NCBI GenBank assembly: GCA_024704765.1
Contig: JAKMXF010000330.1
Location: 124,001-188,000 of the forward strand
From: Oopsacas minuta
Lineage: Eukaryota > Animalia > Porifera
Direction of reading: 5' to 3'
Length of the DNA: 64,000 nt
Below, in pieces: positions 57,382 to 61,375 of this stretch; the stretch's first letter is position 1, and the number at the start of each line of letters is the position of its first letter. Below the pieces are notes generated by a model, which did no database searches, was not told the DNA's origin, and worked only from the letters and a program-made list of their open reading frames with translations. A program made the position numbers and the translations under genes.

Positions 57382-57999
57382 ACTGGTTTAGCTAATTTAT
57401 GATTATGATAAATAGTTAGCCTATGATTACGTAATGCGAATATAGAAAAATGGGTTAGGACACCCTTGTAATATTTCTTTTGGATAGTGTCTGTGACACG
57501 CATGGAGTAATACAGGCTACTCTGTAGAATTGGCAGCTGTAAATGTGTCACAAGAATCAGTTGAACTTTTGCACTAGAAACTTTTCATAATAGAAACTAA
57601 ATATTATTTTCATGAGAATAGAGGATGTCATAGGTCAGATGGGTTCAACAGACTAATTAGTTCCAGTTATAACTGATTCCTTTTAATATTTGTGTAGGAT
57701 AGCACTGTCAAGAGAATACCGTATTTCCCTGAATAAGCGCCAGGACCTAGAAAATAGCTCCAAAATTTTATAACCAACCTTTAGAAGAAAAAGTTTGTTA
57801 AATTACGTCACAGATGTAAGGGTTTGTTTGGGGGGGGGCTCCCCAAAATATCCAATTGTGATAAAATGTCTGGAGGGGCTCTCAAATTGAGGGGGGTGGC
57901 CCCCCTAAATTTGAAATTTGTATGATCTTATTGGGCCCCACCATGTCTGGGGGGACAATGAGTTTGAATTTCGACAGTCCTTGATCATGAACAGAGGGG

Positions 58000-58035
58000 C
58001 ACAGTGGGCATTTTTGAGGGGTGAAATGGAAATAG
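58000..58035 (+). repeat. 3' TIR of the Transib: heptamer, 20-nt spacer, TGGAAATAG
   Basis: CACAGTG GGCATTTTTGAGGGGTGAAA TGGAAATAG, read directly. Confidence 0.9.
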
Positions 58036-58350
58036 AAAACCATGCAAGATAGAGATATATAATGCATTATTAGCCAATAGGAAATTACCTCTGAGAAAAT
58101 GATTTCTGCATAAAAAAAAATCTAGGTCATCTCATTAAAAAGTTATGACGACATTGACACCTCTCATATTATCATAAATTATAGTTTTTGAGCTTAAAAT
58201 TCAGTTACTAGACGCGATAGAAAGCTTATTTTGGATCATAGACACACATTTAACATACCCACATTTTAATAGTATCTTATGCTTCCATCTATTTCAATCA
58301 TTATTTATTAGCAAGTTTATTGTGAGAAAAGAATTTCTTGGTCTGGAGGT

Positions 58351-60399
58351 TCAGAAGTGTGTTTTCTTGCTTGCTTTAGTAAATTTTCTATACACATTGA
58401 GGACAGGATCACTATTACACATCAGTCGTATAAAGATATCTCGAGTATTCAGAGAAAACGACATTTTTCGGGCAAGGTGTTCGCGATACCTTCAAACGAG
58501 TTTGTTTGAAACTTCAACTGCTTCTTCAGAGAAGACTTTAAGTCCATGGCTATTGTTACAAGTTCTAATGAGTTCTGAAGAATGGGCTAGCAATTTATGC
58601 AAGGTTGGACTGATGTTTGCCCAAGGGAACCTGATTACAATGTATTCGTATGTGTCCTTGCAAAGAATATCCAGTCTTTCAGTGTTTATCTCTCGGTCGC
58701 TGTTGTGAATACGCAAACATACTGAAAGGTTAGTGTGGATGACCTTTATATTTTCATGGTATTCTGTTGGTATCAAGGAACAAACCCAGTAAAGAAATTG
58801 GTTTTTGTCCAAGAAACAATTTCGAGCAACTTTGCCAGTTGATGTAGTGCCACCATCACTGCTGGGTTGATCAATCTTCATACCAGTCTTTTCCATCAAT
58901 AAGCCTGAAACAAACTTCATTGAGTTTTTTATACCTAAGGATGATGGTGACCACTTCCTTGCACCTGATTGCAGATGATAAACGAGGGTCATAAACTATC
59001 TGAAGATGCACAAATATGAATGTAATGGAGAAGAGCAAATTATATCGATGTCGGAAATAGGTTGGTGAGTCAATCCAAGACGGTCATTGGAACTTAGAGA
59101 TAGAAATTCTACTTCATTCACACTTTGAAACAGTTCTTTAGCCGATGTTATTGAACGATTAATAGGAAAACCATCTCGTATAAGTTCGACATCATGCAGT
59201 TGTTTGAAAGTCGCAGTACAGAGTTGGCAGTGAGCACCACCGGCTCCAGATAGAATTCCTGCCATTTTTCCATCGAACATGGTCCTGGGCAGTTTTATCC
59301 TCACAAGTCCTTGCGAGAGTGGTATCCCATTTTCTTCCATGTCTGCTACGTAAGGATTGATATAAGTATCCATTAGATGACGTACATTTTCGCTATTTTC
59401 TTTGGCAGCTAGTAAAGTGACTGGGCGAATCTGAAATTGTGAGTTGGGCCTTTCGTTTTCCCAATTAAGTTTGTTTGCCCTGTCGTGAATAGCGAGAGGT
59501 TTGAAAGCAAAGAGAATGAAATTTTTGGAACCAATATCTGGTGACTCTTGAATCTGATTATAAACTTGATGGGATCCAGATCCATCCAAGCCATCTGCTG
59601 CAGAAAATGTCAACGGGAATTCAAATTCAGAATCTGTGGGAAGTGATTCGAGTAGGCGGGAAATTGTCTGTTTGATGATAGAGATGTAAGATATCCCTAC
59701 TCCCATAGGTGCATCAGACACATTGCGGATAAAAATGAATTCCTTCTCCAGAGTAATATCTGCTCGATACTGGGAAATTAGCTCATACTTAGGGAATAGT
59801 ACATTGTCTGACTTACAAAGTCTCCTCAATTCAATGTACTTTCGCTTACCTATTTCCAGTTGCCCTAGGAGGAACGTAGACTTAGCGATTGAGATGTGTG
59901 TCTTTATATTGCCTTGAAATGTGCCTTTGCTGACTATTTCCAGACAGAAGGAACTGGTGGAGTAATCTCCTGAAGAAGATGAGACAAATTGCAGAGCCAT
60001 GGCTGCCATCGTTTTGCTATCCACGTTCTCACTAGCTGCTAAGCTTTTAATCAGGGCTAAAAGAGGTTCCAGACGTACCCTTTGTCCTTTAATCGTTAAT
60101 TCTAGGAGTGGTTTCCTGATAGCCTTTGCATGAACATGATTAGGAGTACAAATATCACCTTCAGACGATAACCGCCTCTTCTCTGCCAATGTTGAATTGT
60201 CAAAGAATATCATATCATCCCATGTATTTAGGTCGTTTCTTTTACGAAATATCTCTCTATCACCCTTCAACTCAACGAATTTGTATCGGATACAACTATA
60301 ATATTTATCATCAAGTTGCTGACTATCCATAAATACGATTGTTGCATCTCTGACAGATTTACGTGAGGATAGAAAGTCAAAAGCTTCCTTGTTATTCAT
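58351..60399 (-). pseudogene. Transib/RAG1-like transposase, 682 codons in one frame with two nonsense codons (58996-58998 TAG, 58492-58494 TGA)
   Basis: The two ORF-track pieces are in the same frame and reading continues to the TGA at 58351. Motifs: DGLDGSG (RAG1 D600 position), PNSQFQIRP, MFDGK (D708), HCQLC (ZnC2), SPLH, TSTGKVAR, HKLLAH (ZnH2), SEEAVEVSNK (E962), then RYREHLARK...SDP. Confidence 0.92.
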
Positions 60400-60949
60400 A
60401 ATGCTAATATTTCATAGGGAAATTTTACATTAAAGTTACACCCATTCAAATGAATGCTTGATACTTTGGGCGCCCTCCGGCGGGTCTAAACTATTATATT
60501 TTTTGAATTTATTATTACAACCTACATTTTAAGACCAGTGAGAGTTCACGCAACGAAACGCCACAACAAGTTTCAGCATAAAATATCCTGTGGACGCCGA
60601 AAAAAAATGTCCTAAATAGTCATCGCGTTTTATCTAGTTTTAGAATAGAAAGTTAGAAACCAAACGACATTTCAAGATGTAAATTAGATACTTGAAATAT
60701 AAATGTTTCATTATTGTAAAGGAATTCTTTCTTCTTAGTTACAAGTGCTAAAAATATAACTATGAAACTTGATCGATTTTGATATACCACACAACAGAAA
60801 TTCCAATTACAAGAAGCCGCAAATATTCATCACCATAACAACCAATTTACTTGTTGAATCAGAATGTAATTACTAATTTCTAGGTTTGAAACGATTGTGA
60901 ATTCAATGATAAAAAGGAAATACAATTCTGAGGGGATAAAAATTTCATG

Positions 60950-60975
60950 CTATTTCCAGCAAAAAGCCCACTGTG
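60950..60975 (-). repeat. 5' TIR of the Transib: heptamer, 10-nt spacer, TGGAAATAG
   Basis: The reverse complement reads CACAGTG GGCTTTTTGC TGGAAATAG. Confidence 0.9.
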
Positions 60976-61375
60976 AGGGGTATCTAGCATTCCTCTTGGG
61001 GGTTACTGTGGGGATGCAGCCATGCAGGATGTGCCAGTACCGGTAGGGTGGCTGGCAAGCCCAATAATACAACTTGCTACCATCCCTATTGATCCTCAGT
61101 AATCCAGGGTTCGCTACTGGGGCTGCAGACAATTGCCCTGGGGTTGCCAGAGACCCCTAGCTACCCCTAATCCCCTATGTCACTGATATACGTAACGAGA
61201 TTCTAATATCAGGAATATACTAAATTAACTTCATATCAATAACATATTAATATCATAAATAAATTTGTGTAGAATCTTTTGAAGTGACAAGTATAACAAT
61301 AATAAAGTGATGAATGAATTCTCCAAATATACAATACTAATCTGCATGAAATATACTCTATAATCTGTACTATCA

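What the first reader, a model, noticed from the sequence alone, without database searches (positions are those of the whole stretch)
57995..60980. Complete Transib transposon with RSS-like asymmetric ends: exact CACAGTG heptamer plus a 9-bp box at 10 vs 20 nt
Seen: both termini are the exact V(D)J RSS heptamer CACAGTG, followed by GGC(A)TTTTTG. An identical 9-mer, TGGAAATAG, lies 10 nt from the heptamer at the 5' end (60950-60958) and 20 nt from it at the 3' end (58027-58035). The TSD is a perfect GC-rich 5-mer, AGGGG. Established: RAG cleaves heptamer-12/23-nonamer signals whose spacers differ by about one helical turn, RAG1 derives from Transib, and both make 5-bp GC-rich TSDs; bipartite ends with unequal spacers have been described in some Transib families. 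Inference: this is a '10/20 rule' paired-end system in a probable sponge, and the distal box may be read by the transposase N-terminus as the nonamer is read by RAG1.
Basis: partly seen in the sequence, partly recalled or inferred. Interest (0 to 1): 0.9.

Follow-up and report, generated by a model that had tools for sequence, protein, structure and literature searches.

The report
Sponge Transib transposon, unequal ends
This is a recently active but now broken RAG1-related "Transib" jumping gene of the glass sponge Oopsacas minuta, whose two ends carry the V(D)J-type heptamer plus an inner 9-base box set one DNA turn deeper at one end; the layout is real and strongly conserved, but this kind of asymmetry is already published for Transib and RAG-like transposons.

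Summary
The element spans 58000-60975, with exact CACAGTG at both tips. TGGAAATAG lies 10 nt in at the transposase-upstream end and 20 nt in at the other. The TSD is AGGGG, and the ~683-codon transposase frame has two in-frame stops.

The host is Oopsacas minuta (Hexactinellida). The protein is a Transib/RAG1-core transposase (HzTransib E=4e-9; fold Z 18.7 to mouse RAG1).

Five more copies (96-99% identical) end exactly at the heptamers. Four of them have their own perfect 5-bp TSDs.

In eight families (transposase identity down to about 40%), the upstream spacer is always 10 nt and the downstream spacer 19-20 nt. Pairwise identity is 83-88% for the box and about 33% for the spacers. The short spacer is always on the transposase-upstream side.

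Residues 90-157 fold like the RAG1 nonamer-binding domain, so "the N-terminal region reads the box" is plausible. It is unproven, as is any pairing "rule".

Asymmetric bipartite Transib/RAGL ends and Transib NBD equivalents are already published (2005, 2019-2023). This scan reached the same reading on other loci of this genome (s1-252713, s1-211778). The finding is a new member of a known kind, of moderate interest.

The parts
57995..57999 (.). Target-site duplication AGGGG, left copy
   Evidence: Identical 5-mer at 60976-60980. Sibling copies have their own perfect 5-bp TSDs.
58000..58006 (+). Heptamer CACAGTG of the 3' (transposase-downstream) end, read inward
   Evidence: BLAST alignments of five sibling copies stop at or within a few bases of this tip, and the extracted ends start with the heptamer. 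Contigs from another organism diverge at 58000 (table 7).
58007..58026 (+). Long spacer, 20 nt
   Evidence: The length is 19-20 in 8 families. Pairwise identity is 33-45%.
58027..58035 (+). Distal box TGGAAATAG of the 3' end
   Evidence: Pairwise identity is 88% across 7 families. The family consensus has an extra G after it that this copy has lost (table 4).
58036..58170 (+). 3'-specific subterminal conserved blocks: AGATAG at 58047-58052, a block of about 28 nt near 58062-58089, and a CRE-like palindrome at 58146-58153. The palindrome is mutated here to TGACGACA; sibling copies have TGACGTCA.
   Evidence: Alignment A2 of 3' ends of 7 families; motif search.
58351..60399 (-). Transib transposase frame of about 683 codons. 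It is broken by TAG at 58996-58998 and TGA at 58492-58494.
   Evidence: HzTransib 6PQN matches at E=4e-9 and 2e-3 for the two pieces. Fold Z is 18.7 to mouse RAG1. All other contigs read C at 58997, which gives a Trp codon, so that stop is private to this copy (table 3).
59929..60132 (-). Coding region for the NBD-like domain, residues 90-157
   Evidence: VIA-align to the RAG1 nonamer-binding domain 3GNA_A gives Z 6.9, rmsd 3.2 A and 67 of 68 residues aligned. The match is colinear with full RAG1 (model 96-467 to RAG1 394 onward). The motif R-K-P-L-x-E-L-T-x-K-x-x-R-x-R-L is conserved.
60214..60399 (-). Coding region for a conserved N-terminal helical domain, residues 1-62
   Evidence: pLDDT is 94 when folded alone. 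No informative fold match was found.
60400..60949 (-). 5' leader of about 570 nt with 5'-specific conserved blocks near the tip
   Evidence: The leader is 570-710 nt in all families with a defined start. Alignment A3.
60950..60958 (-). Distal box TGGAAATAG of the 5' (transposase-upstream) end
   Evidence: Pairwise identity is 83% across 6 families.
60959..60968 (-). Short spacer, 10 nt
   Evidence: The length is exactly 10 in all 7 families with a 5' end. Pairwise identity is 33%.
60969..60975 (-). Heptamer CACAGTG of the 5' end
60976..60980 (.). Target-site duplication AGGGG, right copy

Best explanation
Window 58000-60975 is one dead copy of a young, multi-copy autonomous Transib DNA transposon of the glass sponge Oopsacas minuta. 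It has two private or recent stop codons.

Shown:
- It encodes a RAG1-core-type transposase and inserted with a 5-bp target duplication.
- Its ends share only two inverted modules. One is the cleavage-site heptamer CACAGTG plus G. The other is the distal box TGGAAATAG(G).
- The box sits 10 bp from the heptamer at the transposase-upstream end and 19-20 bp at the downstream end, about one helical turn deeper.
- The heptamer, the box, both distances and the polarity are held constant across at least eight sponge families whose transposases are only about 40-67% identical. The spacers meanwhile have drifted to near-random similarity. The layout is therefore under selection.

Inferred:
- The catalytic core reads the heptamer and cuts by the nick-hairpin route of RAG and HzTransib.
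- A dimer of the NBD-like domain (residues 90-157) binds the two boxes in the synaptic complex, as the RAG1 NBD dimer binds the two nonamers.
- The one-turn offset makes a 5' plus 3' pair the preferred or only productive pair.
For: Identity:
- HMMER matches to HzTransib.
- Fold Z 18.7 to mouse RAG1.
- Source names for the homologues and the assembly GCA_024704765.1.

Mobility:
- Six copies, 96-99% identical, end at the heptamers. Five have perfect 5-bp TSDs of different sequence.
- One copy is nested inside another Transib.
- Depth over the element is 6-30 times that of the flanks.
- A deletion derivative that keeps both end regions is abundant in another run.

Constraint:
- The 5' spacer is 10 nt in 7 of 7 families.
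- The 3' spacer is 19-20 nt in 8 of 8 families.
- Pairwise identity is 100% for the heptamer, 83-88% for the box and about 33% for the spacers.
- The short spacer is always on the transposase-upstream side, as in the insect families of PMC1131882.

Reader domain:
- Model residues 90-157 superpose on the RAG1 NBD (3GNA, Z 6.9, 67 of 68 residues) and are colinear with full RAG1.
- The HzTransib structures align only from residue 166.
- The NBD helix motif is conserved across the clade.

Precedent: ProtoRAG experimentally prefers its asymmetric 5'/3' TIR pair (PMC8289069).
Against: - There is no biochemical or genetic evidence for which domain binds the box, or that symmetric pairs fail.
- The families share ancestry, so they are not independent inventions. 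Only the contrast between box and spacer speaks for constraint.
- The downstream distance is 19 or 20 (18 in one decayed copy), so spacing is not absolutely fixed.
- The box is not an A-tract nonamer, and the NBD-like domain lacks the GRP AT-hook motif (I-R-K-P here).
- The NBD fold Z of 6.9 is modest for a small helical domain.
- Part of the long spacer is weakly conserved (AATGG-like in four families), and both ends carry further end-specific blocks. Other sites may therefore create the asymmetry.
- I sampled about 180 kb, not the genome, so symmetric-ended elements could exist.
Confidence: 0.6

Rival explanations
1. The layout is functional, but the box is read by another part of the transposase. 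One candidate is the conserved N-terminal helical domain (residues 1-62), tethered by a disordered linker of about 30 residues. Another is the C-terminal tail. In this reading the NBD-like domain serves mainly dimerisation or stability, as proposed for NBD* of amphioxus BbRAG1L.
For: - Residues 1-62 are conserved across the clade and fold confidently (pLDDT 94).
- In BbRAG1L the target of NBD* is unknown, and the C-terminal tail clamps the TIR (PMC8289069; bioRxiv 10.1101/2023.08.20.553239).
- The NBD-like domain lacks the GRP motif.
- Some sponge families carry a CCHC zinc-knuckle tail.
Against: - The N-terminal domain has no DNA-binding fold match (best Z 4.6).
- The window family and the L011 family lack the zinc-knuckle tail yet keep the same box.
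- The position of the NBD-like domain, directly before the dimerisation domain, matches RAG1.
Confidence: 0.2
2. The asymmetry is tolerated rather than required. The extra 9-10 bp at the downstream end holds, or makes room for, a 3'-specific function such as a host-factor bending site or an RNA 3'-end or regulatory signal. The transposase would pair any two ends carrying a heptamer and a box, so there is no rule.
For: - Part of the long spacer is weakly conserved between four families.
- The 3' end carries many further conserved blocks out to about 170 bp, including a CRE-like palindrome.
- The downstream length varies between 19 and 20.
- Mouse RAG1 without RAG2 shows no 12/23 preference, according to PMC8355894.
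Against: - All eight families sampled keep exactly one short and one long end with the same polarity, despite about 60% protein divergence.
- The offset equals one helical turn, which keeps the box on the same DNA face.
- ProtoRAG shows a functional preference for asymmetric pairs (PMC8289069).
Confidence: 0.2

Closest known systems
Insect Transib families with RSS12/RSS23-like ends (Transib5 of D. melanogaster; Transib2_AG and TransibN1-3_AG of A. gambiae; Kapitonov & Jurka 2005, PMC1131882, Fig. 4C)
   Same: Single-gene Transib with a 5-bp TSD and a CAC-heptamer tip. A second conserved block follows after a spacer that is about one helical turn longer at the 3' end. The polarity is the same: short at 5', long at 3'.
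   Different: The spacers are 10 and 19-20 rather than 12 and 23. The distal block is TGGAAATAG rather than an A-rich nonamer-like sequence. The heptamer is the exact RSS consensus CACAGTG rather than CACAATG. The host is a hexactinellid sponge.
Subgroup I Transib and the protist AanRAGL transposon (Tao et al. 2022, PMC9435367)
   Same: Asymmetric TIRs made of two conserved elements separated by unequal spacers (4/13 bp in AanRAGL, also a 9-bp offset). An NBD equivalent is present in the transposase. Relatives of the window family have a zinc-knuckle tail like CTT1.
   Different: Membership of Subgroup I was not tested by phylogeny here. The window family itself has lost the zinc-knuckle tail. 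There is no RAG2-like gene.
HzTransib of Helicoverpa zea (PDB 6PQN and related entries)
   Same: It is the closest solved homologue by sequence (E=4e-9). The catalytic core fold is shared (Z 12.5-14.5), as are the 5-bp TSD and the RSS-like heptamer.
   Different: Its TIRs are described as symmetric, with no nonamer-like element (PMC8289069). The solved chains align only from residue 166 of the sponge protein, so they have no counterpart of the N-terminal domain or the NBD-like domain.
Vertebrate RAG1 with 12/23 RSSs, and PflRAGL-A of the acorn worm (bioRxiv 10.1101/2023.08.20.553239)
   Same: The heptamer is the identical CACAGTG. A distal element is offset by about one turn between partners (11 bp in RSSs, 10 bp in PflRAGL-A). 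An NBD fold lies N-terminal to the dimerisation domain. As with TR2 in PflRAGL-A, the few bases next to the heptamer match between the two ends of one element.
   Different: There is no RAG2 partner. The NBD has no GRPR/K motif. The distal element is not an A-tract. It is a mobile element, not a domesticated recombinase.

Membership tests
Transib superfamily of DNA transposons | Transposase homologous to the RAG1 catalytic core | tested here: met
   phmmer against HzTransib 6PQN gives E=4.2e-9 (residues 170-407) and 2.2e-3 for the second piece. Foldseek E=1e-12 and VIA Z 18.7 to mouse RAG1. Relatives carry PF26100 RAG1_RNase_H. My own Pfam scan of the window pieces found nothing.
Transib superfamily of DNA transposons | 5-bp target-site duplication | tested here: met
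   AGGGG here. Perfect 5-bp TSDs in four of the five sibling copies and in L007a, L010 and the outer element of L006. L011 matches at 4 of 5 positions. No TSD is recognisable for L009 or L012.
Transib superfamily of DNA transposons | Terminal inverted repeats beginning with a CAC heptamer that resembles the RSS heptamer | tested here: met
   Exact CACAGTG at both tips and in every family except one mutated 3' tip (CATAGTG in L012).
Transib superfamily of DNA transposons | No RAG2-like gene inside the element, which distinguishes it from RAGL transposons | tested here: met
   The element is 2976 bp, and the only long frame is the transposase.
Transib superfamily of DNA transposons | Acidic catalytic residues in conserved motifs | tested here: met
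   The D in DGLDGSGSH (D269), E334 and the E in SEEAVEVSNK align with the HzTransib and RAG1 motifs. D269 and E334 are invariant in 30 relatives. Catalytic activity itself was not tested, and this copy has two stops.
Transib/RAGL elements with asymmetric bipartite (RSS12/23-like) ends | Two conserved elements separated by a variable spacer whose length differs between the ends by about one helical turn | tested here: met
   10 versus 19-20 nt in 8 families. Pairwise identity is 83-88% for the box and about 33% for the spacers.
Transib/RAGL elements with asymmetric bipartite (RSS12/23-like) ends | A-rich nonamer-like distal element and 12/23 spacer lengths, as in RSSs | tested here: not met
   The distal element is TGGAAATAG (variants AGGGAGTWG and AGGGAATAG). 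The spacers are 10 and 19-20.
Systems obeying a 12/23-type pairing rule | Efficient reaction only between one short-spacer and one long-spacer end | not testable with these tools
   Only natural co-occurrence could be seen: one end of each type in every element sampled. This needs cleavage or transposition assays, or a whole-genome census.
RAG1 nonamer-binding domain (NBD) | Small helical domain directly N-terminal to the dimerisation and DNA-binding domain | tested here: met
   Model residues 90-157 match 3GNA_A residues 389-456 with Z 6.9, rmsd 3.2 A and 67 of 68 residues aligned. The full-length alignment is colinear from RAG1 residue 394. A weak HMMER alignment covers the same region. The Z score is modest for a helical domain.
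RAG1 nonamer-binding domain (NBD) | GRPR/K AT-hook-like motif that contacts the nonamer A-tract | tested here: not met
   The window has A-I-R-K-P and the clade consensus is x-R-K-P. No G-R-P motif is present.

The most novel reading that the evidence does not exclude
In these sponge Transibs, a RAG2-independent transposase uses an NBD dimer to demand one 10-bp and one 19-20-bp end. That would be a working one-helical-turn pairing rule in a non-bilaterian animal. It would place the mechanism behind the 12/23 rule in Transib itself, before RAG2 capture. It would also supply a naturally asymmetric, NBD-bearing Transib as the experimental model that symmetric HzTransib cannot provide.
Probability: 0.3. 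Interest if true: 0.6.

Novelty: new member of a known kind. Interest (0 to 1): 0.35.

Why it matters
The origin of the 12/23 rule is still argued. Published models already assume that the ancestral Transib/RAGL element had asymmetric ends and an NBD (PMC9435367; bioRxiv 10.1101/2023.08.20.553239). However, the only biochemically and structurally studied Transib, HzTransib, has symmetric ends, and its solved structures contain no NBD.

This sponge clade offers many families, some with intact reading frames. They have the exact RSS heptamer, a sharply defined distal box, a fixed offset of 9-10 bp and an NBD-like domain. That makes them convenient material for testing whether spacer asymmetry is enforced without RAG2.

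As a genome feature it is otherwise an ordinary decayed DNA transposon. The asymmetry is a further example of something already described, and the same layout has already been reported by this scan at other loci of the same genome.

Tried and rejected
- **Pfam scan:** nothing significant for the two ORF pieces. Identity came from PDB sequence search and fold search instead.
- **Internal box copies (59850-59858, 59934-59942):** I considered them as internal binding sites. They encode L-E-I in two transposase motifs and are absent from the other families, so I treat them as incidental.
- **Within-family conservation:** at 96-99% identity everything is conserved, so this is uninformative about constraint. 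I moved to divergent families.
- **N-terminal domain (residues 1-62):** folded alone and searched by Foldseek and by VIA wide. The best Z was 4.6 and no E-value was at or below 0.001. No assignment was possible.
- **Automatic TIR and TSD search:** it failed for L009 and L012. A motif search recovered both pairs of ends. Their TSDs are not recognisable, and the L012 3' heptamer is CATAGTG.
- **MITEs:** none found in the roughly 180 kb held here. The only non-autonomous form seen is a deletion joint in contigs from another run.
- **Empty or excised allele at this site:** no such joint appeared in the contigs of the source organism. Contigs drop rare variants, so this is not evidence of absence.
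- **Literature on sponge Transib:** no paper in the held library describes them.
- **Not attempted:** a scan of JGI metagenome contigs, a phylogeny against the published Subgroup I/II sequences (not available here), and identification of the organisms behind ENA assemblies ERZ25072730 and ERZ25071281 or the coded runs.
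Full report
**1. The observation**

Reading 57900-61100 confirms every stated coordinate.
- AGGGG lies at 57995-57999 and again at 60976-60980.
- CACAGTG lies at 58000-58006, and its complement at 60969-60975.
- TGGAAATAG lies at 58027-58035 after a 20-nt spacer. Its complement lies at 60950-60958, 10 nt from the heptamer.

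The minus strand carries one long frame starting at 60399. It is interrupted by TAG at 58996-58998 and TGA at 58492-58494, and ends at 58351, about 683 codons in all.

The 9-mer is expected 0.92 times in the 64-kb window. It occurs four times, all inside this element.

**2. What it is**

Pfam gave nothing for the ORF pieces. The first piece matches the Helicoverpa zea Transib transposase (PDB 6PQN) at E=4.2e-9, and the second at E=2.2e-3. The alignments cover the DGxDG and SEExxExxNK catalytic motifs.

An AlphaFold model of residues 1-467 (pLDDT 77.8) matches mouse RAG1 core structures at Foldseek E about 1e-12 and VIA Z 18.7. It matches HzTransib at Z 12.5-14.5.

The window's own protein is encoded on contig JAKMXF010000330.1 of assembly GCA_024704765.1. 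Close relatives are named Oopsacas minuta by their sources. O. minuta is a hexactinellid sponge.

The element has a single gene and no RAG2-like partner. It meets the defining features of Transib.

**3. A young, multi-copy family with no intact copy found**

Five further full-length copies in the same assembly (L002-L006) are 96-99% identical. Their alignments to the window element stop at or within a few bases of the two heptamers. Four of them have perfect 5-bp TSDs of unrelated sequence: CCCTG, CACCT, TATAG and TGATG. The fifth has a damaged 5' tip.

All six copies have broken frames. No full-length protein above 90% identity was listed.

Logan contigs of the source organism give 6-30 times more summed depth over the element than over its unique flanks. 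Every other contig reads C at 58997, which turns the TAG into a Trp codon, so that stop is private to this copy.

The same family, at 95-99% similarity, is present in runs from three other coded organisms that do not hold the window's unique flanks. One of those runs has an abundant internal-deletion form (joint 58259 to 60225) that keeps both end regions.

One copy (L006 2366-5346) is inserted inside another Transib (L006 233-6542, TSD TAACT).

**4.

I recovered ends of divergent relatives from the same assembly and from two ENA assemblies.

| Family (locus) | Identity to window transposase | 5' spacer | 3' spacer | Box |
|---|---|---|---|---|
| Window family | - | 10 | 20 | TGGAAATAG at both ends |
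| L007a | 67% | 10 | 20 | TGGAAATAG at both ends |
| L009 | 55% | 10 | 20 | TGGAAATAG at both ends |
| L011 | 42% | 10 | 19 | TGGAAATAG at both ends |
| L006 outer element | not measured | 10 | 19 | TGGAAATTG / TGGAAGTAG |
| L010 | 48% | 10 | 19 | AGGGAGTTG / AGGGAGTAG |
| L012 | about 40% | 10 | 19 | TGGAAATAG / AGGGAATAG |
| L007b (3' end only) | not measured | - | 19 | TGGAAATAG |

A decayed copy at 76% identity (L008) has 10 and 18.

The short spacer is on the transposase-upstream side in every case. This is the same polarity as the RSS12-like 5' and RSS23-like 3' ends of the insect families in Kapitonov & Jurka 2005 (PMC1131882).

Mean pairwise identity between families:
- heptamer: 100%
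- 5' spacer: 33%
- 3' spacer: 33-45%
- box: 83% at 5' ends and 88% at 3' ends

The transposases are only 41-67% identical to each other. Unconstrained DNA at that divergence should be randomised, as the spacers nearly are. The box, both distances and the polarity are therefore under selection.

**5. Refinements to "bipartite"**
- The base after the heptamer is always G.
- The next 3-7 bases match between the two ends of one element but differ between families. This is reminiscent of TR2 in RAGL elements.
- The box is usually followed by G and an A/T run.
- Each end has further end-specific conserved blocks.
  - At the 3' end: AGATAG about 11-13 nt after the box, a block of about 28 nt, and a CRE-like TGACGTCA palindrome. 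The palindrome lies about 150-167 bp from the tip in at least four families.
  - At the 5' end: several blocks within the first 100 nt.
- Four families share an AATGG-like stretch in the long spacer.
- The two extra TGGAAATAG copies inside the gene encode Leu-Glu-Ile and are specific to the window family. I treat them as incidental.

**6. Who might read the box**

Model residues 96-467 align colinearly with mouse RAG1 from residue 394. Residues 90-157 superpose on the isolated RAG1 nonamer-binding domain (3GNA_A, Z 6.9, rmsd 3.2 A, 67 of 68 residues, 21% identity). HzTransib structures align only from residue 166.

The first NBD helix motif (R-K-P-L-x-E-L-T-x-K-x-x-R-x-R-L) is conserved through the clade and resembles RAG1's L-L-S-L-T-R-R-A-Q-K-H-R-L. 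The G-R-P AT-hook motif is absent. That fits a distal element that is not an A-tract, but this link is inference.

A second conserved helical domain (residues 1-62, pLDDT 94) precedes a disordered linker. It has no informative fold match and remains an alternative reader.

Some relatives end in a CCHC zinc knuckle. The window family does not.

**7. Mechanism**

Shown: the anatomy, the mobility signature and selective constraint on the asymmetric layout.

Inferred from RAG, HzTransib and ProtoRAG:
- The catalytic core cuts at the heptamer by nick-hairpin chemistry.
- The NBD-like dimer bridges the two boxes.
- The one-turn offset favours pairing of a 5' end with a 3' end.

ProtoRAG has been shown experimentally to prefer its asymmetric pair (PMC8289069). 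Nothing here shows that symmetric pairs fail.

**8. Comparison with what is known**

Asymmetric RSS12/23-like ends in some Transib families were described in 2005 and reviewed in 2021 (PMC8355894). Tao et al. 2022 report the following (PMC9435367):
- Subgroup I Transibs all have asymmetric TIRs.
- NBD equivalents exist in Transib.
- The protist AanRAGL has two conserved elements with 4/13-bp spacers.

PflRAGL-A has a heptamer-TR2-asymmetric spacer-nonamer layout with a 10-bp offset.

I found no paper in the held library describing sponge Transibs. Two earlier follow-ups in this scan reached the same reading at other loci of this genome (s1-252713 and s1-211778). The first of these is the nested pair that I analysed independently as L006.

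**9. Verdict**

The finding is a new member of a known kind. It has some value as a candidate experimental system for the origin of the 12/23 rule. Interest 0.35.

Noticed in passing
window 58146-58153; L005, L007, L011, L006 3' ends (about 150-167 bp from the tip): A CRE-like palindrome, CAATGACGTCATAA, sits at nearly the same distance from the 3' tip in at least four families. In the window copy it is mutated to TGACGACA. With the ATTGG and TATA-like motifs between it and the tip, it could be a regulatory or promoter-like module, or a further binding site.
   Followed up: partly
window 58036-58100 and 60850-60949; alignments A2 and A3: Both ends carry end-specific conserved blocks well beyond the box. 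One example is AGATAG plus a block of about 28 nt at the 3' end. The functional ends are therefore longer and more complex than heptamer plus box.
   Followed up: partly
L006 233-6542 with L006 2366-5346 nested inside: A copy of the window family is inserted, with TSD TGATG, inside another Transib family. That outer element has TSD TAACT, 10/19 spacers and box variants TGGAAATTG / TGGAAGTAG.
   Followed up: yes
window 58000-60975, seen in runs X5, X6 and X8: The same family, at 95-99% similarity, occurs in runs from three other coded organisms that lack the window's unique flanks. One run has an abundant deletion derivative (joint 58259 to 60225, depth 483). These may be related species or horizontal spread; this was not resolved.
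   Followed up: partly
window 57634-57999: The left flank of the insertion is itself repetitive. Its depth is 250-470 against 80-100 for unique DNA, and part of it is also present in the other organisms' runs. It contains a 15-nt inverted repeat at 57882-57914. The Transib probably landed in another repeat.
   Followed up: no
window 59850-59858 and 59934-59942: Two further exact TGGAAATAG copies lie inside the transposase gene in sense orientation, encoding Leu-Glu-Ile. They are present only in the window family.
   Followed up: yes
window 60214-60399 (residues 1-62): A conserved N-terminal helical domain that is confidently predicted (pLDDT 94) has no informative match in the PDB by Foldseek or VIA.
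   Followed up: yes
alignment A1, C-terminal columns: Several sponge families (for example P0012-P0015 and P0046-P0066) end in a CCHC zinc-knuckle tail like the CTT of RAG1L proteins. The window family and the L011 family lack it but keep the same box.
   Followed up: partly
L009 (ENA ERZ25072730, contig labelled 2x): An intact 706-residue transposase with 10/20 ends sits on a very low-coverage contig of a sample whose main contigs are labelled about 280x. No TSD is recognisable. It may be a rare insertion or a minor organism.
   Followed up: no
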